Virus record (IMG/VR): IMGVR_UViG_3300032116_000004
Location: 62,001 to 126,000 of that record
Strand: one strand, 5' to 3'
Length of the DNA stretch: 64,000 bases
Numbering within the stretch: position 1 is the first letter of the stretch; each line of letters starts with the position of its first letter. Both the position numbers and the translations under genes were made by a program. Below the pieces are notes generated by a model, which saw only the letters and a program-made list of their open reading frames with translations, was not told the DNA's origin and made no database searches. Positions 11,926-32,541 of this stretch are shown here, piece after piece.

Positions 11926-11988
11926 TGTAGGTGCCGATGGTCGGGCCTACATAGTCAACTTGCTTAAAAAAGGAGAATGTTATGACTA
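11926..11988 (+). ncRNA. ROSE-like RNA thermometer in the hsp20 5' UTR
   Basis: Hairpin TGTAGG..CCTACA, then TAGTCA/TGACTA stem enclosing CTTGCTT opposite the AAGGAG SD and covering the start codon. Confidence 0.7.
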
Positions 11989-12419
11989 AAATCACATCTT
12001 TTGATCTCACCCCCTTCTATCGTAATACCATTGGCGTCGACCGCTTGTTCGACCGTATCATGGATCAGTTTGACCATGCCGCGCAAAGCCAGAACTACCC
12101 GCCTTACAACATCCTGAAAACAGGAGAAGACACCTATGAAATCCAGGTGGCAGTGGCTGGGTTTGCCGAAGGTGAAGTGAATGTAGATTTCCATGAAGGA
12201 CAGTTGGTGATCACCGGTGAAAAGAACACCGATGACTCAGAATTGAACTATCTACATCGCGGTATCTCGGCTCGCAAGTTCCTGCGCACATTCCAACTGG
12301 CTGATTATGTAGAGGTTCGCGATGCTGTGATGAAAGACGGCATCTTGAACGTGCATCTACAGCGCATCGTGCCCGAAGAAATGAAGCCAAAGCGTATTGC
12401 AATCTCATACGCAAAATAA
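11982..12419 (+). CDS. ibpA: Small heat shock protein Hsp20 (IbpA-like)
   Basis: IGVDRLF, NYPPYNI, AVAGF, YLHRGIS.RKF.R.F.LA, PEEMKPKRIAI. Confidence 0.95.
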   Translation: MTKITSFDLTPFYRNTIGVDRLFDRIMDQFDHAAQSQNYPPYNILKTGEDTYEIQVAVAGFAEGEVNVDFHEGQLVITGEKNTDDSELNYLHRGISARKFLRTFQLADYVEVRDAVMKDGILNVHLQRIVPEEMKPKRIAISYAK

Positions 12420-12478
12420 TATAATAGCGTAAATACAGTGGAGGGCACCCGCCCTCTACTGAGGACAAAGGGAACGAC

Positions 12479-12799
12479 ATGTCAGAAACTGCTACACAAC
12501 CCAAAACTAAAACAACCGTCAGGCCCAGAGAGGTGCTCAAAGAACCTCCCATGTTCAAAGTTATCTACATCAATGACAATAAAACTGCCATGGAATTCGT
12601 GATTGAAAGCCTGGTAGAACATTTTGATTACAGCCCCTCAACAGCAGAAAAAATCACTTTCGACATCCATGAAGCAGGATCTGCAGTGGTGGCCGTGTTG
12701 CCCTATGAGATAGCCGAACAAAAAGGCATCGAAGTCACTGTGATGGCACGTGGTGCCGGGTATCCTTTACAGGTCAAACTAGAGCCAGATTCGGCCTAG
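12479..12799 (+). CDS. clpS: ClpS N-degron adaptor
   Basis: PPMFKVIYINDNKT.MEFV, IH..GSAVV, EIAEQK, YPLQVKLE. Confidence 0.92.
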   Translation: MSETATQPKTKTTVRPREVLKEPPMFKVIYINDNKTAMEFVIESLVEHFDYSPSTAEKITFDIHEAGSAVVAVLPYEIAEQKGIEVTVMARGAGYPLQVKLEPDSA

Positions 12800-13587
12800 A
12801 GACTTATTTCAATCCTACGAGGGTAATACACAGGCTTGCACCAAGGTGTGTTGCCTCTTCCTCTACAGTTGTTGACATATCTGATGCCTTGTATGGTGGT
12901 ATCAACATCGCCGTGGTAGTGTCCAAAACACCAAGTAGAGATCTTGCTCTCGGTGTCCTCGCCCAATACCTGCGTCATATAACTGTTGCCTGAACAGTTG
13001 ATCCTATAGCTGTCGGCTATCTCGATGTCATGATGTATGAGATCCAAACGCGGTGGAGTATGGGTGATCAACACTATTTTTTTCACGTCTTGATGCGTCT
13101 GCAATCTACGCACTGATCTGGCCAGATAAGCGAAATCCTGCATGCTCATGGATTCTATGGCATCCGAAACTGTCCTATCAACTTGGTATCTGTCTTGGAA
13201 CCACAACCGCGTCTGATCATAGTCCACTCCAGGTTCAAAATCGAAACTCCACCAACCATTGGTACCCAGGAATGCTACACCATCAACGATGACTACATTG
13301 TCTTGGAGATAGGTAACATTGGGTATGTCGCTTATTTCTTCCACTAGACTGCGATAACTGTCCCCAAGATCGTTCAAGGTCCATCGATGCTCGTCGTTGC
13401 CATCTATGAACATCACTGCACGATATCGTTGGCTGAGTTTTTCCAAAGCATCTTTGACCAAGGCACGGTCTCGAGACACATCTCCGGCCACCACACAAAG
13501 AGTAGCAGTGGCCTGTCCTTCCCAATCAAATGGTTGATCCCAAGTTTCCACATGGAGGTCTGAAATTAAATCAAATGCTATTGGCAT
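12796..13587 (-). CDS. Calcineurin-like metallophosphoesterase
   Basis: SDLH, AGD, GNDEH, THT, FGHYH, NCRG. Confidence 0.88.
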   Translation of the reverse strand: MPIAFDLISDLHVETWDQPFDWEGQATATLCVVAGDVSRDRALVKDALEKLSQRYRAVMFIDGNDEHRWTLNDLGDSYRSLVEEISDIPNVTYLQDNVVIVDGVAFLGTNGWWSFDFEPGVDYDQTRLWFQDRYQVDRTVSDAIESMSMQDFAYLARSVRRLQTHQDVKKIVLITHTPPRLDLIHHDIEIADSYRINCSGNSYMTQVLGEDTESKISTWCFGHYHGDVDTTIQGIRYVNNCRGRGNTPWCKPVYYPRRIEISL

Positions 13588-13611
13588 GATACATATTTAA
13601 AAGGATTTTTT

Positions 13612-13986
13612 ATGCACATAATATTTGGCAAAGAAACAGCAGAGGGGTTGAAGGACAAATACACGGTGTTGGAACTGGATCAGATACAGATACAATCCAA
13701 TGGTCCGATTTTGGACAGTTTCTGTGTGTTGGACACTGATGCAGTGAGATTGGAAGAAATAGGTACCATGCCTAATATCATCAATCTCCATGCCAAACTC
13801 ATGGAAAACTATCGCAAGCGGAATTGGGGTTTCTGCGAACAGGCCATAGAACACCTACACGGACGCTGGGGCGGCACGCTGAACAGCTTCTATGATGAAA
13901 TTTCTCAGAGAATCGCTAAGTATAAACACAAGGACCCAGGTCCGGATTGGAACGGCGTATATGAAAAATTTAGTAGCGACCGTTAG
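13612..13986 (+). CDS. Hypothetical protein resembling the C-terminal helical domain of class III adenylate cyclases
   Basis: LELDQI..Y...W..C..AI..L.G...FY...RI...PDWNGV pattern; no catalytic domain. Confidence 0.5.
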   Translation: MHIIFGKETAEGLKDKYTVLELDQIQIQSNGPILDSFCVLDTDAVRLEEIGTMPNIINLHAKLMENYRKRNWGFCEQAIEHLHGRWGGTLNSFYDEISQRIAKYKHKDPGPDWNGVYEKFSSDR

Positions 13987-14353
13987 TGTCGCTTTTTTAC
14001 TGTCGGCTTGTGCTTTATTCCCTAGTTATTTTGACTATAATGAGCAAGCCCGTTTGGTAGACATCATCGAACTGACCAAGACAGATGCAGTATGTGCCAC
14101 TGAAGAAATCAGAACAGTGAGCAGAGATATACGCCACAAAGTAGATTGGCTGACCACATACAGTGCCAGCTTGCCTGACAATTCCAAGATACAAGAGATG
14201 AATCGTAATCTCAGTGAAATAGTGGGAGATTTTGATCAACGCTATCGTGGAGACCGACCACCTAGTAAATTTTTCTGTAGTGCCAAAATTAAAAACATAA
14301 ACGAAGCCGCTCGCAAGATGTTGTCAGTGAGTGGAAGGAGACCTCGAGCATGA
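13961..14353 (+). CDS. Lipoprotein
   Basis: Signal peptide with LSAC lipobox. Confidence 0.7.
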   Translation: MKNLVATVSVAFLLSACALFPSYFDYNEQARLVDIIELTKTDAVCATEEIRTVSRDIRHKVDWLTTYSASLPDNSKIQEMNRNLSEIVGDFDQRYRGDRPPSKFFCSAKIKNINEAARKMLSVSGRRPRA

Positions 14354-14592
14354 ACATTCAACAAGTGGTAGAAAATTTCTGCAGACAAAACAATGCCTTG
14401 GGATATCGAGTGCAAAAAGCCTTGGAATATCGTGATGCATTGTCGCGAGGTGATGTCAACTCAGCAGAATTCCAGGAACTCATGGAAGATCTGCAACGCC
14501 TTGACAACATCCAACTGTCAGCAGATGAACTGGATCAACAGATACTGTTCAACGACTGCATCAATCTGCTAAAAAATATACCAATCTCTTAG
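14350..14592 (+). CDS. Hypothetical protein
   Basis: Coupled ORF. Confidence 0.6.
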   Translation: MNIQQVVENFCRQNNALGYRVQKALEYRDALSRGDVNSAEFQELMEDLQRLDNIQLSADELDQQILFNDCINLLKNIPIS

Positions 14593-14667
14593 TAACAAAT
14601 AAAACTACCGCTTATTTTTTGTCTTGGCTCCGTTAAATATTATGTCGCCTAAGGAGCTAGACAAAAG

Positions 14668-15285
14668 ATGTTTTATAACTATAAAAAACTCTGGGCGGGC
14701 GTAGTTTTATCACTATCTATGACCGCAGTAGTTGCACAGACCGATCCAATCATCACAGATTCCACCAGCAGGTCTACGTCGACTACCAATTCCAGTTCTA
14801 CAACCACTATCAAAAGTCCGCCACCAACGGCAGTGGCACCCGCTGTGACCACCATCAACAATGATGTGTGTGCCGTGGCCGCGTCAGGTGCTGTGCAGAC
14901 TCAGATCCTGGGTATCTCCATGGGGGGAACCATGCGTGACATGAACTGCGAACGCATCAAACTGTCAAAGAATTTATATGACATGGGCATGAAGGTCGCC
15001 GCAGTGGCCACGCTGTGTCAAGATGAACGTATATTTACTGCCATGATGGCCGCTGGCACACCCTGCCCAGTAGAAGGTAAAATTGGCGCCGATGCTCGTG
15101 CTGAGTGGGAACGTAGAGGTGTGCTAGATTCTACCAAGAAAGAAAACGTGGGGCATTATGCTACCAAGCCGCCCGTGATTGACTTGAGCAAGCCCGCAGA
15201 AAAATCTCCACGCCGAGACGATTTTGCCTGTAAAGATTACGCCGGTAACGACCCTACAATCAAAGAAAGAATGGGTTGCAAATAA
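14668..15285 (+). CDS. Exported Cys-containing conserved phage protein
   Basis: Signal peptide; SPPPTAVAP, SGAVQTQILG, NCERIKL, AGTPCP; AGGAG RBS; TAAATA upstream. Confidence 0.75.
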   Translation: MFYNYKKLWAGVVLSLSMTAVVAQTDPIITDSTSRSTSTTNSSSTTTIKSPPPTAVAPAVTTINNDVCAVAASGAVQTQILGISMGGTMRDMNCERIKLSKNLYDMGMKVAAVATLCQDERIFTAMMAAGTPCPVEGKIGADARAEWERRGVLDSTKKENVGHYATKPPVIDLSKPAEKSPRRDDFACKDYAGNDPTIKERMGCK

Positions 15286-16827
15286 ATGAACATCTGGTTG
15301 CGGTTCTGGATCTTCTGGTCAGTGGCCACGTTTGCGCTATGGTTGCACCAGCCGGCACGGGCACAAACAGCTACATCTAATCTGATCAATCCTGCGGGCA
15401 CAGCCTGGGGTATACCTAGTGCCCAGGTCCTGAACACAGCAGGTATCACTGCTGTGGAAGGTGGTGGTGTGTATGTGCCAGGCAGTCCTTACTACAACAG
15501 TGACACCAACACCATTAGATTCAGTTATATCATGGGCACAGTGGCACAGAGCATTGCCATCAACTCGGCTTTGGCCGGCACCGGCATCAAATGGGTGGGC
15601 TATGACTATTCTTGGGAGATACAAAATTCTCCGGGACAGTATGGAGGGACTCTGTTCAGCACTATCTCGCTAAATGGCAACAATGGTAAGGCCTTGGAAT
15701 CATATACTTACAACTATCCGCAAGGTATCACACCAGCATCCTCATGGTTGCTGGATTCAGGACGCAAATTGTTTTCTCAGAGCGGCGGCTATACTACCGG
15801 ACAGGTAACCAGTCTCGACGTTACCTGGACTGGCAAGGACAGTCTTTTCTGGATGGGTCTTTATGGTCCGCGTGTGCGCAACACTGATGTGAGACTGTTG
15901 TATGATGCGGACCAGTGTGCGATCAATCCCATCAGTGATCCCACTTGCCCTGGCTACCAGACTGCGATGTGTAGCGCCAATCCTCTTTTCAGTGCTTCTT
16001 GTCCGGGATATGCCCAGGCATTTCTCACACAACAATGTAGCATCTCTGCCTTGTATGATCCTTCATGTCCGGGCTATCAACAGGCCTATTTTACGCAACA
16101 ATGCACGGCCAATCCCTTGTATGATCGTTCCTGTCCTGGTTACAACACAGCCTACGTCACGCAACAAAACACACAGGCCGCATCAACGACCACGACAACC
16201 ACATCTACGACCACCAGCTCGGTATCATTGACTGGAACTGTATCTACCACAGAACCTACCTTGACCATAGCCACTGACGGCTCGGTATCTACCGGCGTGG
16301 CAGTTGTACCTGACAGCCAAGTCAACACTGTGGTTACCAAGAAAGTTGAAACCACTGCCAGCCCTACTGGCACATTGAGCATACAGATCCAGACCAAACC
16401 CTCTGCCGAGTCAGAACAGCAGAAAAAAGGTCGAGAAGCCACTGCGGCCGAGCGTGAACTCGCACTGAAAGAAGAAAAGAAACGCGAAGAAGAATCTAGC
16501 GACCGACGCAAACAATTGGCCGAACGCCAGCGTCGTGCTGCCATGGAAAATGCTGTGGCACGTGGTCGCGAAGCCATACGTGAAGCCGATTCGGCCAAGA
16601 CCTTGGATGAGCAGATGGCCAATCAATCTTATGTAGTGGCCACCATGAGTTTTGTGCCGGGCTTTGAAGCCTATGGTCAGGCTCGCCTACCAGATGCACA
16701 ATTTTACGCACCTAGAGAAATCTATCGTGGACAACAGAACGTGGATAACCGCAGATTGTTGCAGGGACTCACTGGTGCTTCGGACCGACGCCATGCAGAC
16801 ATGGTCGACAGACAGTATGCGAGATGA
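15286..16827 (+). CDS. Exported protein with Cys-rich tandem repeats and Thr/Ser linker
   Basis: Signal peptide; four C-x9-CPGY units; poly-Thr; charged coiled coil. Confidence 0.75.
   Translation: MNIWLRFWIFWSVATFALWLHQPARAQTATSNLINPAGTAWGIPSAQVLNTAGITAVEGGGVYVPGSPYYNSDTNTIRFSYIMGTVAQSIAINSALAGTGIKWVGYDYSWEIQNSPGQYGGTLFSTISLNGNNGKALESYTYNYPQGITPASSWLLDSGRKLFSQSGGYTTGQVTSLDVTWTGKDSLFWMGLYGPRVRNTDVRLLYDADQCAINPISDPTCPGYQTAMCSANPLFSASCPGYAQAFLTQQCSISALYDPSCPGYQQAYFTQQCTANPLYDRSCPGYNTAYVTQQNTQAASTTTTTTSTTTSSVSLTGTVSTTEPTLTIATDGSVSTGVAVVPDSQVNTVVTKKVETTASPTGTLSIQIQTKPSAESEQQKKGREATAAERELALKEEKKREEESSDRRKQLAERQRRAAMENAVARGREAIREADSAKTLDEQMANQSYVVATMSFVPGFEAYGQARLPDAQFYAPREIYRGQQNVDNRRLLQGLTGASDRRHADMVDRQYAR
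15910..16155 (+). repeat. Intragenic Cys-rich repeat (four units, e.g. CSANPLFSASCPGY)
   Basis: Visible in translation. Confidence 0.85.
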
Positions 16828-17267
16828 TCATGGAGATACCCAAAGATTTATCCGGTGGCCTGAATGCCTTGAAACAGGCCAAGAAACTGGGAGATGACAC
16901 CAGTAAATTTGTTGGCGAAATACAAGGCGACATGGAGAAAACTGTTCAGAATGAACAGAAAAAGCGAGTCCAGGAACGGCGCCAACAAGAACAACTCTTG
17001 ATCAATGCAGAACTCACAGCCATACGTAAATTTGAAGAAGAACTACAACGAGAAGAGTTAGTAAAAAAATTAAAAACAGATTTGACTGCGAAGCATGGCA
17101 AGGATGCTTGGAATCAAGTGCAGAAGATCAAGACGGAGATACAGACGCAGAATGCACAAGACATGAAGTTTATTGACAGAGATCGCCATCGGGTGCAGGA
17201 TCTGTTCTGGTACTGCGTGGGCGTGGCTGCTTTGCTCACATATTTTTTCAAACTATATAAGGTATGA
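16824..17267 (+). CDS. Coiled-coil protein with C-terminal TM anchor
   Basis: Charged helix plus hydrophobic tail. Confidence 0.65.
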   Translation: MIMEIPKDLSGGLNALKQAKKLGDDTSKFVGEIQGDMEKTVQNEQKKRVQERRQQEQLLINAELTAIRKFEEELQREELVKKLKTDLTAKHGKDAWNQVQKIKTEIQTQNAQDMKFIDRDRHRVQDLFWYCVGVAALLTYFFKLYKV

Positions 17268-17447
17268 TCGTGGCCAAATTATTTGCCGTGGTAGCAGTGC
17301 TAGTGGGTTTGTTGGGCATCTGGTTGGAGCATCAGAGCATAGCAATAAAACAAGGCACGATACAGAATAGATCTCAATGAACAGAGGTCTGATCAAGTCG
17401 CTAAAAAATTACAACGCCAACGAGGCGTGCAATAAAAGGAGAAGGAA

Positions 17448-17927
17448 ATGGGAGAAGAAATCAAAGACGTAAACAAAAAGATCGATGACATGGATGCGGC
17501 GGTGAAAAAATACGCCAGCAAAGACACAGTGATCTCCATTGGAGGTTATGAGTTTACGCCAGCTAAACTCATGGTGGCTGCCACCATAGTATCGTCTGTG
17601 TTGGGCGGATTGTATGGAGCTTTTGAAGTATACAAAGACTACCAGAGCATGAAGAAAAAGATCGCTGAGTATGTCACGCCAGATCTAACAGAAATTTACA
17701 AGAAACTGGAACTGGTGCAACAGAGTTCAGAAAAAGGCACACAGTATACGCAAGACATCAAGAACGATCTCAAGCAAGATATCCGCAGGCTAGAAAATGT
17801 GGTAGAACAAGTAGAGCGCAGTAGCAAACAAAGCCAGCGCGAAACTGAAAAAGATGTGCGCGAACTGCGACGAGAAGTAGACGACAAGATCAAAAAAGCC
17901 CTAGATAATCCCTTGGCAGGCAAATAA
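17448..17927 (+). CDS. Membrane-anchored coiled-coil protein
   Basis: One TM helix then coiled coil; AGGAG RBS. Confidence 0.7.
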   Translation: MGEEIKDVNKKIDDMDAAVKKYASKDTVISIGGYEFTPAKLMVAATIVSSVLGGLYGAFEVYKDYQSMKKKIAEYVTPDLTEIYKKLELVQQSSEKGTQYTQDIKNDLKQDIRRLENVVEQVERSSKQSQRETEKDVRELRREVDDKIKKALDNPLAGK

Positions 17928-17934
17928 GCGCTCG

Positions 17935-17955
17935 ACCCGCTTCGGCGGGTTTTTT
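17935..17955 (+). terminator. Intrinsic terminator
   Basis: ACCCGC-TTCG-GCGGGT plus T run. Confidence 0.9.
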
Positions 17956-17989
17956 GTTAAATACAGCAAACAATAAACTAGGAGCTCGA

Positions 17990-18259
17990 ATGAACGATCG
18001 TAAACTGTTCAAATGGTTGGCCTTGCTGATTTTCATGCCCTTGATGCTGGCCATATTTGGCGGTGATAGATTCCGCTATCCCTGCCAAGATCCTGCCAAC
18101 TGGGACAAAGACATGTGTAAGTTACCCGCTTGTGATGTCACAAGGACCTGCCCAGATCACATATTCAAAGGTGGCCGCGATCCACGTCTAGGCCCGCCCA
18201 GTGCTGGAACTACGACTGCATCGGCACCCCAAACAACTCTAGGAGCGAATTGCAAATGA
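17990..18259 (+). CDS. Small membrane-anchored Cys-rich protein
   Basis: FRYPCQDP.NW...CK...C...TCP; TAAATA at 17958-17963. Confidence 0.7.
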   Translation: MNDRKLFKWLALLIFMPLMLAIFGGDRFRYPCQDPANWDKDMCKLPACDVTRTCPDHIFKGGRDPRLGPPSAGTTTASAPQTTLGANCK

Positions 18260-18792
18260 TTTTTAAATTTTTCAAAGAAAAAGATCAAGAAGATCCATTT
18301 ATCTACACCGAAGATCAGCTCATGGCCCGCCTGCGTTTTTTCATAGGTGTTTGCTTGGCGCTGACACTGACAGGCATAGTGTTTGTGGTGCTGTATTCAA
18401 TCATATTCGTCACCCAGCCACTCAACGCTATGAGCCCCATAGATCAGAAGTTTTTTGAACTGATCATACCCATTGCTACGTTCCTTACCGGTACGCTGTC
18501 GGGCATCATGTTGGCCGGCAAAGACGATAAAGAAGCCAAGATGAAAGCCCTGGAAGCGGCCACGAGATCTACTCCTGTGAGTGGTAATCCCAGCAACAGC
18601 GGCACCAGTGGCATGGGAGGCCTGAGTGCATCTGCCAGTTTTGGCGGAGCATCAATGAGTTTTAACAAGCCCATGGGCGGATTCGGCGCACCCGGTGCCG
18701 CACCTACAGCACCCAGTTTTGGAGCACCTGCACCATTTGTAGCATCCTCGGGCAAGATGGGACCAGCACAGGATCCACACCCTGAGATCTGA
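18256..18792 (+). CDS. Two-TM membrane protein with low-complexity tail
   Basis: Two hydrophobic helices, Gly/Pro/Ala tail. Confidence 0.7.
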   Translation: MIFKFFKEKDQEDPFIYTEDQLMARLRFFIGVCLALTLTGIVFVVLYSIIFVTQPLNAMSPIDQKFFELIIPIATFLTGTLSGIMLAGKDDKEAKMKALEAATRSTPVSGNPSNSGTSGMGGLSASASFGGASMSFNKPMGGFGAPGAAPTAPSFGAPAPFVASSGKMGPAQDPHPEI

Positions 18793-18822
18793 TGAGCTGG
18801 TTCAAACACAGCCCTCACAGAT

Positions 18823-25436: not shown

Positions 25437-25981
25437 GGATAGTGTGTGTGCTGGCCGACGAGTTCTCGGCAACTCATATCGAGCCTGGGCAACTCAAAGA
25501 CATAGGGGCTCTCTGGGGATCTTGGCGCACATGGCGTGCCTGGCAGACAGACAATGTTCTGTGCCACGATTTTTCCAAGGCCGACGAATTGATAAAAAGA
25601 GCGTTCCATGCTGTGTGCAATCTCTACATACCCAACAAGAACTATGGTGCGTTGAACAGACCTTCCAAGGTAAATCTATATGATGGAGATTTTCCAGGAG
25701 AGTTCGACCACCCTGAAGAGATCGTGTCCATGCATCTCGTGGCTGACTCCGCAGATTTGGTTTTGCTTTTTGGTTACGATGTCAGCAAGATTACCGAAAC
25801 AGACAAGTTCCAAAAGCATAAGAAAACCAATTACCTTAATGCTTTTCGGGCCACCCTAAATACCTATCCTCAAACCCAATTTGTCTTGATTGATCATGCC
25901 AATGATTTGGATGCAAGCCTGACCAAAATCCCCAATCTCACTTGCGATAAATTTGAAGCCGTGTTACAATTACTTAATTGA
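25433..25981 (+). CDS. Hypothetical protein
   Basis: GTG overlapping the upstream stop; LLFGYD motif. Confidence 0.6.
   Translation: MRIVCVLADEFSATHIEPGQLKDIGALWGSWRTWRAWQTDNVLCHDFSKADELIKRAFHAVCNLYIPNKNYGALNRPSKVNLYDGDFPGEFDHPEEIVSMHLVADSADLVLLFGYDVSKITETDKFQKHKKTNYLNAFRATLNTYPQTQFVLIDHANDLDASLTKIPNLTCDKFEAVLQLLN
25942..25970 (+). promoter_or_regulatory. Possible sigma70 promoter for uvsE
   Basis: TTGCGA-17-TACAAT. Confidence 0.45.
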
Positions 25982-25999
25982 TAACTCTTCTAGGCTTTC

Positions 26000-27019
26000 A
26001 TGACTGCTCGAATTGGTTTTTGTTGTAAATGGTTAGACGATCCCAGTGAAACTGCTGGCATGAAAGTCAATGCCAAGAATCGTGAACTCAATGGGCGGAG
26101 CACTACCATGCGTTGGTTGCGTGAGCATGCAGACCAAGCAGAACAGCGCCAGTGGGACATCATGAATCACAATGCACAGGCCGCTCTCAACATGGTAGAA
26201 CGTGTGGGCAGTCTACCTCATCATCTACGCATGGTTCGACTGGGGTCTGAAATGCTACAAGGCTACACAGAACCCAACTGGATTGACTGGTGGCAACAAG
26301 CAGACATCCAACGACACCTAGAAAAGATCTTTGCTCCTGTGGGTGCCCGTGCCCGAGAGTTGGGAGTAAGACTTTCATTCCATCCTGGACAGTTCTGTGT
26401 GTTAGCATCAGAGAACGACGGCATCGTGGAACGTAGCATCCAAGAGTTTGAATATCATGCAGACATGGCCCGCTGGATGGGCTATGGCGCCACCTGGCAT
26501 GATCATGGCTTCAAGATCAATGTTCACCTGTCGGGCAAGGGTGGGCCTGAAAAATTCTTGCGTAGCCTGGGCAAACTTAGCCCCGAGGCACGCAATCTCA
26601 TAACTATCGAAAACGACGAGATATCAAATGGTTTGGACCTTACTTTGCTTGTGGCTGATAACGTGGCTCTTGTGCTGGACATTCATCACCATTGGGTCAA
26701 AACAGGAGAATACATCGATCCCCAAGATGATCGTGTTCAGCGTGTGGTTGAGTCTTGGCGTGACGTTCGCCCTGCTATGCATTACAGTGTTAGTCGCGAA
26801 GATATTCTTGTTGATCATGATCCCCGAGTTCGCCCAGATCTTGCTGGACTTCTTGCACGAGGTCATAAAAAACAGCAACTCCGCGCCCACTCGGATTTCT
26901 ATTGGAATTCGGCTGTGAACGACTGGGCCGCTGGTTTCTCCGATCAGTTTGACATCCAGTGCGAGGCCAAAGGTAAAAATCTAGCAAGAGATGGTTTCGC
27001 CAAGCACGTCACTGTGTGA
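26000..27019 (+). CDS. uvsE: UV damage endonuclease
   Basis: RIGFCC, RLSFHPGQF.VL.S, IENDE, LDIHHH, HYS, RAHSD, EAK.K. Confidence 0.93.
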   Translation: MTARIGFCCKWLDDPSETAGMKVNAKNRELNGRSTTMRWLREHADQAEQRQWDIMNHNAQAALNMVERVGSLPHHLRMVRLGSEMLQGYTEPNWIDWWQQADIQRHLEKIFAPVGARARELGVRLSFHPGQFCVLASENDGIVERSIQEFEYHADMARWMGYGATWHDHGFKINVHLSGKGGPEKFLRSLGKLSPEARNLITIENDEISNGLDLTLLVADNVALVLDIHHHWVKTGEYIDPQDDRVQRVVESWRDVRPAMHYSVSREDILVDHDPRVRPDLAGLLARGHKKQQLRAHSDFYWNSAVNDWAAGFSDQFDIQCEAKGKNLARDGFAKHVTV

Positions 27020-27785
27020 TATCCCTTTTGATGTAGAAGTTCCCTATGCCATGCGGCCGCACATGCGACCTTGGCAACCCGGTGAGTCCATACTGACCAC
27101 GGACAGGGATTTTGATCGATATCAAGACGCCAAACTCAACAACTACAATCCGGTATATGGAGATTCAGCCAGTCGTGAACTGGTTTATCAAGCCGTAGAT
27201 GCACTGAGAAAATATGATCCCACTGCACCTGTGATCCAAGGAGATGCTCCTGTGTGGCAACTAACTCGGGCACTACAGGAAGACTTTGTGATATGGGCAC
27301 CCAATCGTGCCGGCGAACTCTCTGCACAGATACTGAGTGTGTGCTTGCCATCGGGGTGGGATCCTCAAACCAAAGTCAACAAGACTTTCCTTGAAATACA
27401 TGAACCCGTGCCAGACTTTGACATAGTCAACAAGGCATCTGGACACATCGCACGTATGATCACTACCCGGGGTCCTTTCATAAGATCAGTGTGGAGTATA
27501 GCCAACCGTCCTGCGTTGAGCAGACATCCCAGTGGTGTAGAAGCATGGTCCACGGAGACAATAGATGACATGTGGTTCAGATCGGAACGCCAGACCACTA
27601 TACCCATACACAGTCAAGCCGCGCTGTTTTTGATCAGAGTCTACATGATACCACTACGGGATGTGTTCCAAGACGCAGATAAAAAACAAAGGATCATCAG
27701 CAGTGTGATGAGCATGACTGATGCTGTGATCGAATACAAAGGCCTAGGATACTTGCGGAGTTATTTCGCTAATCGGCGTGTCTAG
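26991..27785 (+). CDS. Heme-dependent oxidative N-demethylase alpha-subunit-like protein (DUF3445-type)
   Basis: QEDF, VCLPSGW, K..K.F.EIH.PVP, R..W, RSERQT, LF.IRVY. Confidence 0.72.
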   Translation: MVSPSTSLCDIPFDVEVPYAMRPHMRPWQPGESILTTDRDFDRYQDAKLNNYNPVYGDSASRELVYQAVDALRKYDPTAPVIQGDAPVWQLTRALQEDFVIWAPNRAGELSAQILSVCLPSGWDPQTKVNKTFLEIHEPVPDFDIVNKASGHIARMITTRGPFIRSVWSIANRPALSRHPSGVEAWSTETIDDMWFRSERQTTIPIHSQAALFLIRVYMIPLRDVFQDADKKQRIISSVMSMTDAVIEYKGLGYLRSYFANRRV

Positions 27786-28131
27786 TCAGGAAATTGACAC
27801 GCATCTTTCTGGGATGGAAATATTCATCGACCACGGCCTTGGCAGTTTCAATATCAAAAGTTCTGCAACTGAACACATCAAAATAGGCCGTGCCATCTAG
27901 TTCCATGAAATGGCCACAGATATTTGATGTGGTGATCAACTGCATGAGGCTGTAGCCCTGTTTGGGGTCTCCGGGCAGGAGATGTTCGATCACGGGTTCT
28001 CCGTGTGCTGTCATATCGATACGATCCACTAGATCCTTGACGAATCTATAGATGTTGTCGCGGTTGGATATAGATTCAATATCACAACCACTACAATCCA
28101 ACATCAGATGATAACCCCAGTGGGAACTCAT
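27769..28131 (-). CDS. speD: S-adenosylmethionine decarboxylase proenzyme (phage type)
   Basis: WGYHL.LDC, QLITTSNICGH self-cleavage region, DVFSC. Confidence 0.85.
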   Translation of the reverse strand: MSSHWGYHLMLDCSGCDIESISNRDNIYRFVKDLVDRIDMTAHGEPVIEHLLPGDPKQGYSLMQLITTSNICGHFMELDGTAYFDVFSCRTFDIETAKAVVDEYFHPRKMRVNFLTRHAD

Positions 28132-28361
28132 TTGGCAGCAGGTTTCTTGGCTCTCACTGCTTTGGCACGGACAGCAGGTTTCTTTTCCCCAGCAGGTTTT
28201 TTGGCAGCCGGTTTTTTCTTAGGCGCCGCAGCCTCGGAGTATTGTGTGGACATAGGTATCACACCAGGTGTGGTCTGTGGTGCTTCAACTTTGTAAGGGG
28301 CCTCTGGGCAAGGACTTACGGTGGGCTTGGAACCAAAAAACTTTTTTAAAAATGCGAGCAT
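28128..28361 (-). CDS. Small Lys/Ala/Pro-rich protein
   Basis: APYKVE plus KKPAA repeats; GGAG RBS; late motif upstream. Confidence 0.7.
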
Positions 28362-28419
28362 TGCAGTCTCCTTTGTTTTATATAGTGTATTTACACAGCA
28401 TATTATCGAAACCTAGCAT

Positions 28420-28443
28420 ATTGCACTGCAATGTAACTAAATA
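28420..28443 (+). promoter_or_regulatory. PhaR-box-like palindrome next to a late-type TAAATA upstream of aceA
   Basis: ATTGCA-C-TGCAAT at 28420-28432; TAAATA at 28438-28443. Confidence 0.55.
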
Positions 28444-28468
28444 TCCTGGCTCAACAGGAGGAAACACC

Positions 28469-29746
28469 ATGCAAGACCGTAGATGGAAGGTATACAAACT
28501 GCAACAAGAATGGACAGAAAACCCGCGCTGGACCGGAATCAAACGTGATTATTCAGCCGAGGACGTGGTGCGTTTGCAAGGTTCCAACCCCATAGAATAC
28601 AGTCTGGCACGGCGTGGCGCCGAAAAATTGTGGCGTTTGCTACATGAACAAGATTATGTCAACACCCTGGGAGCACTCACGGGCATGCAAGCCCTGCAAC
28701 AGGTCAAGGCCGGTTTGAAGGCTATATATTTGAGTGGGTGGCAAGTGGCCGCTGATGCCAACTTGGCTGGCGCCATGTATCCTGATCAGAGCCTGTATCC
28801 CGCAGACTCTGTGCCAGCAGTGGTGCGTAGGATCAACAATGCTTTTACCAGAGCAGATCAGATCGCCTGGATGGAAGACCAAGAAGATCGAGATTTTTTC
28901 GCACCCATCGTGGCTGACGCAGAGGCAGGATTTGGTGGTGTGCTCAATGCGTTCGAACTCATGAAGGCCATGATCGAAGCCGGGGCCGCAGGTGTGCATT
29001 TTGAAGATCAATTAGCGTCCGTAAAGAAATGCGGACACATGGGAGGAAAAGTCCTTGTTCCAACACGAGAAGCCATCAATAAACTTATTGCCGCTCGTCT
29101 CGCTTCTGATGTTATGGGAGTGCCTAGTCTTGTTATTGCTAGAACAGATGCCGAAGCCGGCGATCTTATCACTTCAGATATTGATCCTAACGACGTTCCT
29201 TTTCTTACTGGTGAAAGAACTGTGGAGGGTTTCTATCGGACCCGAGCAGGATTCGACCAAGCAGTCAGTAGAGCCCTGGCCTACTGTCCTTACGCAGATC
29301 TCGTATGGTGCGAAACAGGCAAACCCGACCTCGACTTCGCCAAGCGATTCGCCGAAGCCATACACCGACAGTTTCCGGGCAAGATGTTAGCCTACAACTG
29401 CTCACCATCATTCAACTGGAGGAAGAACCTAGATGCAGACACAATTGGCCGTTTCCAACGTGAACTTGGAGCAATGGGTTACCGTTTTCAATTCATCACA
29501 CTTGCTGGATTCCATGCTCTTAATCATGGCATGTTTGACCTTGCTCATGGCTATGCTAGGGACGGCATGTCTGCTTTCGTGGAGTTACAAGAGCGTGAGT
29601 TCGCGGATGCGAGCCGTGGTTTCGAAGCTGTCAAACATCAGAGAGAAGTAGGAACCAGTTACTTTGACCGCGTGACTACCACAGTGGAGGCTGATGCTTC
29701 CACCCAGGCTCTCAAAGGCTCAACAGAAGAAGAACAGTTCCACTGA
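28469..29746 (+). CDS. aceA: Isocitrate lyase
   Basis: [31 protein letters not shown] catalytic loop, [16 protein letters not shown]; AGGAGG RBS. Confidence 0.97.
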
Positions 29747-29852
29747 TGGCAAGCACTTGGTCTAGAGTATCTCGACGCAAAAAGATCAAATACGCTGTGA
29801 TCTCGGTATTATGGTGTGCAGGTCTGGCCATTGCGATATGGATCAATCTGCA

Positions 29853-30047
29853 ATGATGCGTAGCATTGAACGCATCTGGGCTCGAGCCACAGGTCATGTC
29901 ATGGGCAACACTGACGAAGACCGCCCTAGAGTGCCCATCTTGACCATGAGAGAAGCAAGGGTAGCACTCTGCCTCAAAACGTTCTGGATAGTGATCCATG
30001 TGATCACTTGCGGATTCATAATAGCAAATGTCATAAGGCACTGGTAA
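29853..30047 (+). CDS. Small membrane protein
   Basis: IWARATGH.MG..D..P motif with C-terminal TM helix. Confidence 0.6.
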   Translation: MMRSIERIWARATGHVMGNTDEDRPRVPILTMREARVALCLKTFWIVIHVITCGFIIANVIRHW

Positions 30048-30048
30048 A

Positions 30049-30678
30049 ATGTTAGAAACCATATGTGAAACATTAGTAGAGGCATACCGCCGCAACTGGA
30101 TCACCAGTCGAGACGGCAACGTCAGCATTCGGCATCATGATCGAGATCATTTCTACATCACACCATCAGGAGTGAGAAAGCAGACCCTACAACCAGACCA
30201 GTTCAAGAAGATCATGATTCTTGAAAATGGTCCAGTGTCTCTCTGGCGAGAAGATTATTACACTGACATCAGCGCCAATCTCAAACCCAGCGGCGAGATT
30301 CCTTTGCACTTTGGACTGCAACGACGCATGGGACAACATGCCTCGGAGGTGCGTGTGGTAGTTCACTTGCATCCAACATACTGTGTGGCGGCCATGCACC
30401 GTGGCATCAATTTAGGCGACATTGTTGCGGACTTTCCAGAACTCAGTAGATATACCAAGGTAGCACCCAATGTGGGAGATGTGCCGCCTATAAGCCAAGA
30501 ACTGGCAGATCGTTGCCACGAAAATTTACAATTAGATCAACAAGGCAACATCGCCTTTGACATCGTGGGCATCCGTGGACATGGTGTGGTTGCTATCGAT
30601 ACCTCACCGTGGCGTGCGTTTGAACACATAGAACGGCTGGAACATATCTGCAAGATAGTGTTGGCCTCGGGAGCGTGA
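30049..30678 (+). CDS. Class II aldolase/adducin family protein
   Basis: DGNVS.R, ITPSG, PSGE..LH, HLHP, GHG. Confidence 0.88.
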   Translation: MLETICETLVEAYRRNWITSRDGNVSIRHHDRDHFYITPSGVRKQTLQPDQFKKIMILENGPVSLWREDYYTDISANLKPSGEIPLHFGLQRRMGQHASEVRVVVHLHPTYCVAAMHRGINLGDIVADFPELSRYTKVAPNVGDVPPISQELADRCHENLQLDQQGNIAFDIVGIRGHGVVAIDTSPWRAFEHIERLEHICKIVLASGA

Positions 30679-31289
30679 TGCAGTTCGTCAGCGATCGCGA
30701 CGTGTATGACTCATGCCCACCACAGTGGTTGTGGGTCTATGACAAACTCATAGTGGCACGAAGACAGGGCATCGCCGCTGGACCGGCTGGTATTCCCGTA
30801 CCATGGTCCGGAGAATATGTGATAAGACCTATCACCAACATCCGCATGATGAGTCGAGGTGCGCAGATCGTGTGGATGGAAAAAGGTGACAGTGACACAG
30901 TGCCCGATGGATTTTTCTGGACCCAGGTGCTCGAAGGTCCGCATGTGTCAGTGGACTACCATTGGGGCCAACAGCATCTCACGGTGCAAGGTTTCAGAGA
31001 TGATCCTCGGAGATTGGATCGTTTTTCACGGTGGTGTCGAACGGATTTAGATCGGCCTTTTCCTGGGATGTTGCACGATCTCAAGTATTATCAGGAATGG
31101 ATCAACGTAGAATACATCGGCGATACAGTGATCGAAGTGCATCTACGATACAATGATGATTTCGCCAATCATGATAGTGATGAGATCTGGCCTGTATGGC
31201 CCGAATCCAGCCAACAACAGCCTCCCGGTACACAGTGGTATCACAGCCCTGCTGGTAGTAGATTGGGCTTCTGGATCAAGGATAAGTAA
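30675..31289 (+). CDS. Conserved phage protein, possible ATP-grasp-like fold
   Basis: YVIRPI.N..M, H.SVDY, INVE.I...IEVHLR. Confidence 0.55.
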   Translation: MMQFVSDRDVYDSCPPQWLWVYDKLIVARRQGIAAGPAGIPVPWSGEYVIRPITNIRMMSRGAQIVWMEKGDSDTVPDGFFWTQVLEGPHVSVDYHWGQQHLTVQGFRDDPRRLDRFSRWCRTDLDRPFPGMLHDLKYYQEWINVEYIGDTVIEVHLRYNDDFANHDSDEIWPVWPESSQQQPPGTQWYHSPAGSRLGFWIKDK

Positions 31290-31293
31290 TTTG

Positions 31294-32004
31294 ATGCTCC
31301 TATTCATATACATCCTGGTGATGACACACATCACCATAGCTTGTGTCACACTTTACTTGCATCGTAGCCAGGCACATAGAGGTGTGACATTTGATCCACG
31401 TGTGGCACATTTCATGAGATTTTGGCTGTGGCTCACCACAGGCATGGTCACCAAACAGTGGGTGGCCACACACAGAAAACATCACAGATTCACTGACGCG
31501 GAAGGTGATCCGCACAGTCCGCAAAATGAAGGAATTTGGCAGATTTTATTAGGCGGTGCTTTTTACTATGCCTGGGCCGCAAAAGACAAAGCCATGGTCA
31601 ACCAGTATGGTGTGGGCACGCCCGATGACTGGGTAGAGCGTCACATCTATGCACCATTCAACTGGTTGGGGGTGACCTTGATGTTCTTTATCAACTGCAT
31701 GATTTGGGGCTGGGACTGGGGTTGGTTGCCTTGGCTATGGCAGATGATTTGGATCCCACTGTGGGCAGCCGGCGTCATAAACGGCCTGGGACACTGGTGG
31801 GGTTATAGGAACACTCAAACCAAAGACTATTCCACTAATATTGTGCCCTGGGCATTCTTCATCGGTGGTGAAGAACTACACAACAATCATCATGCTGATC
31901 CAGCTTCGCCTAAACTCAGCCAAAAACCCTGGGAATGGGATCTAGGATGGACTTATATCAAAGGGCTAGAACGATTTGGTTTGGCCTACAACATCAAGTC
32001 TTAG
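31294..32004 (+). CDS. Membrane fatty acid (acyl-CoA delta-9-type) desaturase
   Basis: His boxes HRSQAH, HRKHH, HNNHH; DPHSP. Confidence 0.92.
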   Translation: MLLFIYILVMTHITIACVTLYLHRSQAHRGVTFDPRVAHFMRFWLWLTTGMVTKQWVATHRKHHRFTDAEGDPHSPQNEGIWQILLGGAFYYAWAAKDKAMVNQYGVGTPDDWVERHIYAPFNWLGVTLMFFINCMIWGWDWGWLPWLWQMIWIPLWAAGVINGLGHWWGYRNTQTKDYSTNIVPWAFFIGGEELHNNHHADPASPKLSQKPWEWDLGWTYIKGLERFGLAYNIKS

Positions 32005-32374
32005 AAAACTTCATATTGATCGTGCCACCGGATTCAAATCCGTTCCAAGGCACCACAGTGGCTCCACCGTTTTGGGTCTGTGAGAATCCTGTGCCATTGA
32101 CATCGGCATCCAAGCGGATGGTCTGATCCGTGGGTGCCATCCAGCCACGGTCCATGTATACTCCGGCCATGGGACCATAGGCCACTGAACCTTGCATATA
32201 CCACTGTTCCGGAACTGTCCAAAAACGCAAGGCGTTGGTATTGTTTGGATCAGATGTGGTCCAGGACCATGACTGACCAGGTGCGATAGTAGTTAAATCA
32301 CCCACTGTGTTGTGGTTAACGGTTAGGTTATATTGGGTGTTGTTGACGATGTTGAGTGTAGCAGTCCAAGCCAT
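31994..32374 (-). CDS. Hypothetical beta-rich protein
   Basis: GGAGG RBS; Thr/Asn/Trp-rich. Confidence 0.6.
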   Translation of the reverse strand: MAWTATLNIVNNTQYNLTVNHNTVGDLTTIAPGQSWSWTTSDPNNTNALRFWTVPEQWYMQGSVAYGPMAGVYMDRGWMAPTDQTIRLDADVNGTGFSQTQNGGATVVPWNGFESGGTINMKFSKT

Positions 32375-32429
32375 GCAGTCCTCCATTTTGATAAAATTAC
32401 TTAGCCAAAACACTATTATCTGGGTAGAT

Positions 32430-32465
32430 TAATTATTGTGCAGTGCAATAATTATCATATATAAT
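32430..32465 (+). promoter_or_regulatory. Phasin promoter with PhaR-box-like TGCAGTGCA over the -35
   Basis: TAATTATTG-TGCAGTG-CAATAATTA inverted repeat; TATAAT at 32460-32465. Confidence 0.6.
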
Positions 32466-32473
32466 AGTTCAAA

Positions 32474-32541
32474 GGAGATGCCGCATGGGGCGGGTCTCTA
32501 GCAGTAAACTCGCTTAACTCAAGGAGAAACACTATGTTTAC
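32474..32541 (+). ncRNA. ROSE-like RNA thermometer in the phasin 5' UTR
   Basis: GGAGAT..GTCTCT hairpin, then GTAAAC/GTTTAC stem enclosing CTCGCTT opposite AAGGAG. Confidence 0.6.

What the first reader, a model, noticed from the sequence alone, without database searches (positions are those of the whole stretch)
11926..32541. The same ROSE-like RNA thermometer, with covariation, precedes both hsp20 and the phasin
Seen: both leaders have an upstream hairpin with a bulged G in the context T-G-CCG..CGG-G (hsp20 TGTAGGT-G-CCGA/TCGG-GCCTACA; phasin GGAGAT-G-CCGC/GCGG-GTCTCT). Both then have a second stem holding CT(T/C)GCTT opposite AAGGAG, closed by different but complementary arms (TAGTCA/TGACTA versus GTAAAC/GTTTAC) that cover part of the AUG. 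Known: U(U/C)GCU paired to the SD is the ROSE signature of ibpA-type leaders. Inference: the phasin is co-regulated with Hsp20 at the translational level, by heat or by IbpA-type autorepression, linking the storage-granule and proteostasis modules. I am not aware of such an element described on a phage phasin.
Basis: partly seen in the sequence, partly recalled or inferred. Interest (0 to 1): 0.72.

Follow-up and report, generated by a model that had tools for sequence, protein, structure and literature searches.

The report
Phage ROSE-type leaders on two genes
A 316-kb freshwater jumbo phage carries the same short, two-hairpin "ROSE-like" RNA leader (a known bacterial heat-sensing translation switch) in front of its small heat-shock gene and in front of an abundant, unnamed 91-residue protein, and this pairing is conserved with compensatory base changes across dozens of related phages.

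Summary
They are the two best hits of any Rfam family in the window, both to ROSE_3, but both score below its threshold (24.7 and 26.9 bits; cut-off 43). A covariance model built from relatives finds two strong copies in the 316-kb genome: before hsp20 and before the 91-aa gene. The 15 large relatives scanned have the same two, except two incomplete records with one; two relatives have a third copy before groES. Hairpin I is 95-99% paired, with compensatory changes at 6 of 8 pairs in each gene family. The CU(U/C)GCUU:AAGGAG helix is nearly invariant. The lower arm over AUG and codons 2-3 is supported only in part. Metatranscriptome contigs place the 91-aa mRNA from the base of hairpin I (32473) to an intrinsic terminator (about 32888). 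The best reading is a phage lineage of short ROSE-type translational thermosensors, perhaps with IbpA-type feedback, since the phage Hsp20 keeps the equivalents of Y34, R93 and R97. The "phasin" label is weak: the window protein has no HMM hit, and a profile comparison gives 45% probability. The "storage-granule" link is unsupported. Temperature response is inferred, not shown.

The parts
11891..11919 (+). hsp20 promoter: TTGACA (11891-96), 17-nt spacer, TATAAA (11914-19). The expected start, about 11925-27, lies at the base of hairpin I.
   Evidence: Direct reading. TTGACA-17-TATAAA is conserved in relatives. The consensus scanner misses it because the second hexamer ends in A. It is sigma-70-like, not a sigma-32 type promoter.
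11926..11951 (+). hsp20 leader hairpin I: a 7-bp stem, a bulged G (11933), CCGA/UCGG and a UGG loop.
   Evidence: MFE fold. ROSE_3 alignment. 95% of cells paired, with 6 of 8 pairs compensatory in 46 distinct hsp20 leaders. dG reaches 0 near 90 C.
11952..11988 (+). hsp20 leader hairpin II: lower arm UAGUCA (11952-57) pairs with UGACUA (11983-88, covering UG of the AUG and codon 2). Anti-SD CUUGCUU (11959-65) pairs with SD AAGGAG (11970-75), with G11962 bulged or in a G.G mismatch.
   Evidence: Anti-SD helix 98.9% paired. RNAalifold predicts it. The lower arm is 71% paired, with compensatory cases L114 and L110. dG reaches 0 near 50 C.
11982..12419 (+). hsp20 gene: an IbpA-like small heat-shock protein of 145 aa.
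   Evidence: Pfam HSP20 5e-18 and phrog_432 1.8e-39. 42% identical to E. coli IbpA. It keeps the equivalents of Y34, R93 and R97.
32436..32465 (+). Promoter region of the 91-aa gene: imperfect palindrome TTGTGCAGTGCAA (32436-48) at the -35 position, and -10 TATAAT (32460-65).
   Evidence: Direct reading. Relatives have TGTTGCAnTGCAACA upstream of TAYAAT. RNA contigs start at 32473, 8 nt after the -10 box.
32474..32499 (+). 91-aa gene leader hairpin I: a 6-bp stem, a bulged G (32480), CCGC/GCGG and an AUGGG loop.
   Evidence: MFE fold. ROSE_3 alignment. 99% of cells paired, with 6 of 8 pairs compensatory in 61 distinct leaders. dG reaches 0 near 90 C.
32504..32541 (+). 91-aa gene leader hairpin II: lower arm GUAAA(C) (32504-09) pairs with (G)UUUAC (32536-41, covering G of the AUG and codons 2-3). 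Anti-SD CUCGCUU (32509-15) pairs with SD AAGGAG (32521-26), with G32512 bulged.
   Evidence: Anti-SD helix 93.9% paired, with U.G and C:G alternating at the U(U/C)GCU position. The lower arm is 80% paired, with compensatory case L073. dG reaches 0 near 45 C.
32534..32809 (+).
   Evidence: 892 homologues, all unnamed. 364 cluster representatives. AlphaFold2 gives three helices, pLDDT 82. Fold searches were uninformative. The link to phasins is weak.
32847..32889 (+). Intrinsic terminator of the 91-aa transcript: AAUCCUACU...AGUAGGAUU followed by a U run.
   Evidence: Direct reading. The longest metatranscriptome contig ends at 32888 and there is no coverage beyond it.

Best explanation
Both leaders are copies of a phage lineage of the short, two-hairpin ROSE-type 5'-UTR element. 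This is the type described for Pseudomonas ibpA and modelled in Rfam as ROSE_3.

Anatomy. Transcription starts at the base of hairpin I. Hairpin I is a stable, G+C-rich stem with a conserved bulged G above a C(C/U)G:CGG top. It probably acts as a folding scaffold or a 5'-end stabiliser. Hairpin II is weak. In it, the anti-Shine-Dalgarno sequence CU(U/C)GCUU pairs with AAGGAG around an unpaired G (or a G.G mismatch). In this phage the hairpin is lengthened by a lower arm that pairs with the start codon and codons 2-3.

Proposed mechanism. At low temperature hairpin II hides the ribosome-binding site. Warming melts it and allows translation to start. The same switch sits on hsp20, on the 91-aa gene and, in some relatives, on groES. 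These genes therefore form one small post-transcriptional stress regulon of the phage, and the 91-aa protein is most likely a proteostasis-related factor.

What is shown: the anatomy, its conservation and covariation, its restriction to these genes, and the transcript ends. What is inferred by analogy with tested ROSE elements: that temperature is the signal, and the direction of the response.
For: Rfam. Both leaders align full-length (positions 1-69 of 69) to ROSE_3, including the bulged-G hairpin I and ACUyGCU...AGGAG. They are the top two hits of any family in the window. 17 of 20 relatives' leaders hit ROSE_3 and no other family, and one reaches the gathering score (43.4 bits).

Covariance model R1. 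It gives two strong hits in the 316-kb genome (71.7 and 71.4 bits). It hits 77 of 80 loci of the 91-aa gene and 63 of 80 hsp20 loci, always abutting the ATG.

Covariation. On plain MAFFT, 88.8% of cells pair, against 39-68% when partners are slid. On model-fitted alignments, hairpin I is 99% and 95% paired, with 6 of 8 pairs changed on both sides in each gene family. RNAalifold independently returns hairpin I and the SD pairing.

Regulon. Across the 15 large relatives (223-364 kb), every strong hit inspected or mapped precedes hsp20, the 91-aa gene or groES. 13 relatives have both hsp20 and the 91-aa gene; two incomplete records have one. Two relatives have a third copy before groES, whose product matches Cpn10 at 1.9e-32. 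Within one genome the three hairpin I stems differ while keeping the same core.

Energetics. dG reaches 0 near 90 C for hairpin I and at 45-50 C for hairpin II. This matches the stable-I, labile-II behaviour measured for Pseudomonas ibpA (PMC3669281).

Transcripts. Freshwater metatranscriptome contigs cover only 32473-32888. The same runs also hold hsp20.

Context. hsp20 lies between clpX-like and clpS-like genes.
Against: No experiment shows a temperature response.

The window's two copies score well below the ROSE_3 gathering threshold (24.7 and 26.9 against 43 bits).

The anti-SD helix is almost invariant, so it is supported by conservation rather than by covariation.

Nearest-neighbour folding does not put the inner helix in the MFE at 37 C. 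It predicts only moderate SD occlusion: the two leaders rank 4th and 7th of 21 GGAG-led genes in the window.

The upper G-C clamp that was important in Pseudomonas is replaced here by U:A pairs.

The lower arm is absent or imperfect in 20-30% of relatives.

The host and its temperature range are unknown. A predicted melting point of 45-50 C is high for lake water.
Confidence: 0.62

Rival explanations
1. Protein-mediated feedback is the main control. The phage IbpA-like Hsp20 binds these leaders and represses translation of its own mRNA, of the 91-aa mRNA and, where present, of groES. When aggregating proteins titrate Hsp20 during infection, repression is lifted. On this reading the element senses aggregation load rather than temperature. 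This could also act together with thermosensing.
For: E. coli IbpA represses its own and ibpB translation through the ROSE-containing 5' UTR. That repression needs Y34, R93, R97 and K98 (PMC10474464). In the alignment with E. coli IbpA, the phage Hsp20s keep Y34, keep R93 in 16 of 17 sequences and keep R97 in 17 of 17. The shared leader on two or three genes fits a single trans-acting repressor. The promoters are not of the heat-shock type.
Against: The K98 equivalent is not basic in the window protein (it is T) and varies among relatives. The paper notes that R93 is also common in alpha- and gamma-proteobacterial IbpAs in general, so its presence may simply be inherited. No binding data exist. 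Complex prediction was not attempted for the RNA.
Confidence: 0.3
2. The leader is a constitutive expression element. Hairpin I protects the 5' end from decay, and hairpin II only sets a fixed, moderate translation rate. There is no sensing of temperature or of Hsp20.
For: A stem-loop at the 5' end is known to stabilise mRNAs, and this role was proposed for hairpin I of Pseudomonas ibpA (PMC3669281). The 91-aa mRNA is abundant enough to assemble from several metatranscriptomes. Predicted SD occlusion is only moderate.
Against: This reading does not explain why the element is restricted to chaperone genes plus one other gene in 16 genomes. It does not explain the strict conservation of CU(U/C)GCUU with an unpaired G opposite the SD, which is the tested thermosensing feature of ROSE elements. 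It does not explain the family-specific lower arm over the AUG.
Confidence: 0.1
3. The resemblance is chance, or a recent duplication with no selected structure.
For: Both scores are below the Rfam threshold. The two 5' lower arms differ by only one base, which would fit a duplication.
Against: The hairpin I stems of the two leaders differ in the same genome, and they vary by compensatory changes across about 100 distinct leaders while staying 95-99% paired. There are two strong hits in 316 kb, both abutting start codons.
Confidence: 0.02

Closest known systems
Short two-hairpin ROSE-like RNA thermometer of Pseudomonas ibpA (Rfam ROSE_3, RF02523; Krajewski et al. 2013, PMC3669281)
   Same: A 5' UTR of about 56-60 nt that starts at hairpin I. 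A G+C-rich hairpin I with the same core (GAUGCCG...CGGGUC, bulged G). A 3'-proximal hairpin in which U(U/C)GCU faces the SD with an unpaired G. It sits upstream of an ibpA-type sHsp gene that begins AUGACU. Hairpin I is stable and hairpin II labile.
   Different: The window copies score 25-27 bits against a cut-off of 43. The top of hairpin II is UU:AA instead of a G-C clamped UGA:UCA. A lower arm pairs with the AUG and codons 2-3, whereas the AUG is unpaired in Pseudomonas. The promoter is sigma-70-like, not sigma-32. It is encoded by a virus and also placed on a non-sHsp gene and on groES.
Classical ROSE elements of alpha-proteobacteria and E. coli ibpA (Rfam ROSE, RF00435)
   Same: UUGCU opposite the SD, an unpaired G or G.G pair, and a start codon drawn into the thermosensing hairpin. 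The nearest cellular Hsp20 homologues found (45-51% identity, Rhizobiales) carry this element above threshold.
   Different: Classical ROSE elements have three to four hairpins and about 94 model positions. The hsp20 leader scores 13.1 bits (cut-off 45) and the 91-aa leader gave no RF00435 match at E<=10. My phage model scores only 15-19 bits on the bacterial ROSE elements.
IbpA self-repression through the ibpA/ibpB 5' UTRs (Miwa/Cheng/Taguchi; PMC10474464, PMC10410725)
   Same: One sHsp could control several mRNAs that share a ROSE-type leader. The phage Hsp20 keeps the Y34, R93 and R97 equivalents.
   Different: The K98 equivalent is not conserved. RNA binding by the phage protein is untested. 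The second target is not an sHsp paralogue.
ROSE-like thermometers on non-chaperone genes (for example, upstream of ABC transporter genes; PMC11342760)
   Same: A precedent for ROSE-type leaders on genes other than sHsp genes.
   Different: Those are bacterial chromosomal genes. Here the target is a virus-only 91-aa helical protein of unknown function. The paper's text does not mention phages.

Membership tests
ROSE-like RNA thermometer, short two-hairpin type (Rfam ROSE_3, RF02523) | Score at or above the curated gathering threshold (43 bits) | tested here: not met
   The window leaders score 24.7 and 26.9 bits, full-length 1-69. Among 20 relatives, 17 hit at 25-43.4 bits and one (the L120 hsp20 leader) reaches 43.4.
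ROSE-like RNA thermometer, short two-hairpin type (Rfam ROSE_3, RF02523) | U(U/C)GCU motif paired imperfectly with the SD in the 3'-proximal hairpin | tested here: met
   CUUGCUU and CUCGCUU face AAGGAG in both leaders. The helix is 94-99% paired across 107 distinct leaders, with U.G and C:G alternating at the U/C position. RNAalifold predicts the pairing.
ROSE-like RNA thermometer, short two-hairpin type (Rfam ROSE_3, RF02523) | An unpaired G (or G.G pair) opposite the SD | tested here: met
   The G of CUYGCUU cannot be paired in either register. The column is conserved in all 63 aligned hsp20 leaders and in most leaders of the 91-aa gene; a few of the latter (for example L059, L077, L083) lack the motif.
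ROSE-like RNA thermometer, short two-hairpin type (Rfam ROSE_3, RF02523) | A stable G+C-rich hairpin I at the 5' end with conserved pairs | tested here: met
   95-99% paired, with 6 of 8 pairs showing changes on both sides. dG reaches 0 near 90 C. RNA contigs begin 1 nt before it.
ROSE-like RNA thermometer, short two-hairpin type (Rfam ROSE_3, RF02523) | G-C pairs flanking the SD/anti-SD core on both sides (PMC3669281) | tested here: not met
   The lower C:G pair is present. The upper side is U:A, U:A and then the loop.
ROSE-like RNA thermometer, short two-hairpin type (Rfam ROSE_3, RF02523) | Temperature-dependent melting of hairpin II and temperature-dependent translation | not testable with these tools
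   Only nearest-neighbour estimates are available (dG reaches 0 at 45-50 C).
Classical ROSE (Rfam RF00435) | Three to four hairpins and a score of at least 45 bits | tested here: not met
   There are two hairpins. The hsp20 leader scores 13.1 bits. The 91-aa leader gave no RF00435 match at E<=10.
Hsp20/IbpA small heat-shock protein (PF00011) | Alpha-crystallin domain above the Pfam cut-off | tested here: met
   65.5 bits against a cut-off of 20.8. 42% identity to E. coli IbpA.
IbpA-type self-repressing sHsp (PMC10474464) | Y34, R93 and R97 equivalents | tested here: met
   The alignment with E. coli IbpA shows Y conserved, R93 in 16 of 17 sequences and R97 in 17 of 17.
IbpA-type self-repressing sHsp (PMC10474464) | Basic residue at the K98 equivalent; binding to its own 5' UTR | tested here: not met
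   The K98 equivalent is T in the window protein and varies among relatives. RNA binding cannot be tested here.
Phasin (Pfam Phasin_2 PF09361; NCBIfam TIGR01841) | Match to a phasin profile above the cut-off | tested here: not met
   The window protein has no hit at E<=10. 4 of 65 distant relatives hit Phasin_2 (best E 1.2e-4), and 1 of 65 each hit TIGR01841 and phaP_Bmeg.
Phasin (Pfam Phasin_2 PF09361; NCBIfam TIGR01841) | Remote homology by profile-profile comparison | tested here: inconclusive
   hhalign of the family profile against 13 rhizobial Phasin_2 domains gives probability 45% and P 2.2e-4 over 44 columns, covering the C-terminal half of the domain.
Phasin (Pfam Phasin_2 PF09361; NCBIfam TIGR01841) | Association with PHA granules or PHA synthesis genes | not tested
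   The neighbours examined are a fatty-acid desaturase and a class II aldolase. The genome was not scanned for PHA synthase.

The most novel reading that the evidence does not exclude
These jumbo phages run their own post-transcriptional stress regulon. A phage IbpA-like Hsp20 binds the ROSE-type leaders of its own mRNA, of the 91-aa mRNA and of groES, and it may also bind host ibpA or rpoH leaders. Translation of the set would then track the aggregation load, or the temperature, of the infected cell. The 91-aa helical protein would be a new, virus-specific partner in this system, for example a phasin-like coat for aggregates or inclusions.
Probability: 0.18. Interest if true: 0.8.

Novelty: new variant of a known kind. 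Interest (0 to 1): 0.6.

Why it matters
ROSE elements are the best-understood bacterial RNA thermometers. Four full-text searches of the held library found no description of one encoded by a phage. Here the element is conserved across a large clade of about 300-360-kb freshwater phages and marks a small set of genes: hsp20, sometimes groES, and an unnamed 91-aa protein with hundreds of virus-only homologues that is visibly transcribed in lakes. This gives a concrete, testable handle on the function of that protein family, pointing to stress or proteostasis. It also bears on how large phages time chaperone production, and on whether temperature or aggregation load modulates infection in natural waters. 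The many natural sequence variants of a minimal ROSE hairpin could serve for structure-function work.

Tried and rejected
- A near-identity search of GenBank phages with 22 kb of the window found nothing.
- The own-genome scan with Rfam ROSE_3 through the genome search did not list the two leaders. Its first look gave only weak hits elsewhere, best 17.8 bits at G000:C1:18049-18105. I relied instead on cmscan of the window and on my own model.
- MFE folding of single sequences does not show the inner anti-SD helix at 37 C. SD accessibility compared with 21 other GGAG-led genes was unremarkable.
- Fold searches with the AlphaFold2 model of the 91-aa protein, against AFDB clusters and the PDB, gave no significant match. 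A PDB profile search hit only designed helical bundles.
- Complex prediction of an Hsp20 dimer with the 91-aa protein returned 'no answer'. It counts neither for nor against binding.
- A weak third hit of the model at 46814-46912 (17 bits) has no start codon in register and was dismissed. The hit before a thioredoxin-peroxidase-like ORF at G000:C1:215288-215353 (16 bits) lacks the anti-SD motif.
- I considered reading CTTGCTTAA as a T4-type MotA box of a middle promoter. I rejected this because a -10 box would fall inside the SD-AUG region, and because RNA contigs include hairpin I from 32473.
- I considered hairpin I as a terminator of the upstream gene. I rejected this because no U run follows it.
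- The genome-contig scan used a single peptide pattern, so the list of cellular relatives is biased. No close donor was found (at most 51% identity), so the host remains unknown.

Full report
WHAT THE WINDOW IS. The window is bases 62001-126000 of a 315,778-bp virus record, about 91% complete. DNA and RNA runs that hold it come mostly from freshwater and lake metagenomes. It has no near relative among GenBank phages.

THE OBSERVATION. Reading the sequence confirms every element described.
- Hairpin I: UGUAGGU-G-CCGA...UCGG-GCCUACA (11926-11951) and GGAGAU-G-CCGC...GCGG-GUCUCU (32474-32499), each with a bulged G.
- Second stem: CUUGCUU or CUCGCUU facing AAGGAG around an unpaired G.
- Closing arms: UAGUCA with UGACUA, and GUAAAC with GUUUAC. 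These reach into the start codon and codons 2-3.

The downstream genes are an IbpA-like Hsp20 (Pfam 5e-18, phrog_432) and a 91-aa ORF.

One nuance. The two 5' arms differ by a single base (AGUCAAC and AGUAAAC) and use different registers on the two coding sequences. The 'different but complementary arms' are therefore less independent than they look.

IS IT ROSE? No Rfam family reaches its gathering score in the window. With permissive thresholds, both leaders align end to end (model positions 1-69 of 69) to ROSE_3, at 24.7 and 26.9 bits against a cut-off of 43.

In a permissive scan of all 64 kb against all 4227 families, these two sites are the two best hits of any family.

Of 20 related leaders, 17 hit ROSE_3 and nothing else. 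One (L120) reaches 43.4 bits. ROSE_3 corresponds to the short two-hairpin thermometers of Pseudomonas ibpA, which were shown experimentally to have a stable hairpin I and a heat-labile hairpin II carrying U(U/C)GCU opposite the SD (PMC3669281).

COMPARATIVE EVIDENCE. I fetched 80 viral loci for each gene and printed their upstream regions. Almost all show the same architecture.

A plain MAFFT alignment of 98 distinct leaders (A1), scored with a hand-written structure, gives:
- 88.8% of cells paired, against 39-68% when partners are slid by 1-3 columns;
- 169 cells with changes on both sides, against 70 in shuffles.

A covariance model built from this alignment (R1) finds 77 of 80 loci of the 91-aa gene and 63 of 80 hsp20 loci. 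The match always ends 12 nt into the ORF, and there are no other matches in about 570 kb.

On the model-fitted alignments:
- Hairpin I is 99% and 95% paired, with 6 of 8 pairs changed on both sides in each gene family.
- The anti-SD helix is 94% and 99% paired but nearly invariant. The one frequent change is U.G to C:G at the U(U/C)GCU position.
- RNAalifold independently returns hairpin I and the SD pairing. For the hsp20 set it chooses the classical ROSE register with a G.G mismatch.

The lower arm is less secure. It is 80% and 71% paired with few compensations. Still, 54-56% of leaders have at least 6 contiguous pairs with their own coding start, against 5% when the arms are swapped between the two gene families. 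There are clean compensatory cases:
- L114: UGGUCA with UGACCA, against the usual UAGUCA with UGACUA.
- L110: UGUCAU with AUGACA.
- L073: GUAU with AUAC, accompanying a Phe-to-Tyr codon change.

A REGULON, NOT A DUPLICATE. In the phage's own genome, R1 gives two strong hits (71.7 and 71.4 bits). The next best scores 17 bits and has no start codon in register.

I scanned 15 large relatives of 223-364 kb, most of them 92-100% complete. In 13 of them the strong hits precede hsp20 and the 91-aa gene; two incomplete records show only one of the two. Two relatives carry a third copy (48.2 and 47.1 bits) in front of a 95-aa ORF that is GroES (Cpn10, 1.9e-32).

Within one genome the hairpin I stems of the copies differ while the N-G-C(C/U)G...CGG-G core is kept. 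The copies therefore evolve separately under the same structural constraint.

hsp20 lies between ClpX-like and ClpS-like genes. The element thus marks chaperone genes plus the 91-aa gene.

TRANSCRIPTS.
- The hsp20 promoter reads TTGACA-17-TATAAA. This places the start at 11925-27, the base of hairpin I.
- For the 91-aa gene, the -10 TATAAT lies at 32460-65.
- Contigs from four freshwater metatranscriptomes cover only 32473-32840, 32480-32888, 32481-32824 and 32510-32824. Nothing lies on either flank.
- The longest contig ends in the U run of a hairpin terminator at 32847-32889.
- The mRNA is therefore monocistronic, about 415 nt long, and begins with hairpin I.
- The same runs also hold hsp20 sequence.
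- Contigs carry no strand or true end information, so this is supportive rather than proof.

ENERGETICS. Nearest-neighbour estimates give dG = 0 near 90 C for both hairpins I and at 45-50 C for both hairpins II. The full proposed folds lie 2-3 kcal/mol above the MFE. Predicted SD occlusion is above the median of 21 GGAG-led genes in the window but not extreme. This is compatible with a labile sensor hairpin, whose non-canonical pairs these models do not capture. It is not evidence in itself.

RELATION TO CELLULAR ELEMENTS. The nearest cellular Hsp20s recovered are 45-51% identical and mostly from Rhizobiales, though the scan was biased by a single peptide pattern. They carry classical ROSE (RF00435) above threshold. 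R1 scores only 15-19 bits on them. Two alpha-proteobacterial leaders (Hyphococcus and Marinicaulis) have the very same CUCGCUU-loop-AAGGAG hairpin. The host is unknown.

THE IbpA-FEEDBACK ALTERNATIVE. E. coli IbpA represses its own mRNA and that of ibpB by binding the 5' UTR. This needs Y34, R93 (irreplaceable), R97 and K98 (PMC10474464). Aligned with E. coli IbpA taken from NC_000913.3, the phage Hsp20s keep Y34, R93 (16 of 17) and R97 (17 of 17), but not K98. Feedback by the phage Hsp20 on all leaders of the regulon is therefore plausible and may coexist with thermosensing. It is untested.

THE 'PHASIN'.
- The 91-aa protein has 892 homologues, all unnamed, and 364 cluster representatives. 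The nearest clusters in the protein atlas are 100% viral.
- AlphaFold2 gives three helices at pLDDT 82. Fold searches are uninformative.
- The window protein hits no Pfam, PHROG or NCBIfam model.
- Among 65 distant relatives, 4 touch Phasin_2 (best E 1.2e-4), and one each touches TIGR01841 and phaP_Bmeg.
- hhalign of the family profile against 13 rhizobial Phasin_2 domains gives 45% probability over 44 columns.

'Phasin-like' is a lead, not a finding. Nothing examined nearby is a storage-granule gene. Complex prediction with Hsp20 gave no answer.

VERDICT. The RNA interpretation is right in kind: this is a divergent, phage-borne lineage of the short ROSE-type element, present on hsp20, on the 91-aa gene and sometimes on groES. 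Temperature control is the most likely mechanism by analogy (confidence about 0.6), and Hsp20 feedback is a serious companion hypothesis. The phasin and storage-granule part is not supported. Four full-text searches of the held library found no prior description of a phage-encoded ROSE element.

Noticed in passing
window 10230-11429 (+) and 12479-12799 (+): hsp20 is flanked by a ClpX-like AAA+ unfoldase (zf-C4_ClpX plus AAA_2) and a ClpS-like adaptor. Together they form a phage-encoded proteostasis cluster. ClpS starts 60 nt after the hsp20 stop with no clear terminator between them, so the two may be co-transcribed.
   Followed up: partly
window 30049-30678 (+) and 31153-32004 (+): A class II aldolase and a fatty-acid desaturase lie just upstream of the 91-aa gene. 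A desaturase is itself a typical temperature-adaptation gene, but it has no ROSE-like leader.
   Followed up: no
window 32436-32448 and 28422-28434: The palindrome TTGTGCAGTGCAA sits at the -35 position of the 91-aa gene promoter. Relatives have TGTTGCAnTGCAACA at the same place. A perfect ATTGCACTGCAAT occurs at about 28422, followed by CTAAATA and an SD plus ATG. This may be a phage-specific promoter or operator class.
   Followed up: partly
L178 1501-1851 and L198 (relatives G005, G012): A third ROSE-type leader (48.2 and 47.1 bits) precedes a groES gene (Cpn10, 1.9e-32) in two related phages of about 342-345 kb. The window's own genome has no Cpn10 match.
   Followed up: yes
L147-L162 (distant hsp20 loci): A distant group of phage hsp20 genes has a different leader: the hairpin AGGUCGCUUUAGGAGGGCCU, then ACUGUCUAACAAGGAGG. 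This may be a CUGUCU anti-SD variant. The model R1 does not detect it.
   Followed up: no
L266, L273 (Hyphococcus aureus, Marinicaulis MAG), about 40 nt upstream of hsp20: These bacterial sHsp leaders have exactly CUCGCUU-GAACC-AAGGAG, the same hairpin II core as the phage 91-aa leader. They score below the Rfam thresholds.
   Followed up: partly
L179 1501-1799 (relative G002): A weak model hit (18.9 bits) precedes an RNA polymerase omega/Rpb6-like ORF (PF01192, 4e-12). The hit is probably chance, but a phage-encoded omega-like protein is notable.
   Followed up: no
window 32500-32619 (metatranscriptome records 3 and 6): A second variant, 90-95% identical, of the 91-aa transcript from a related phage is present in the same RNA runs. 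Its own hairpin I 3' strand reads GGTGGGTCTCTG. Related phages are therefore co-expressed in the same lakes.
   Followed up: no
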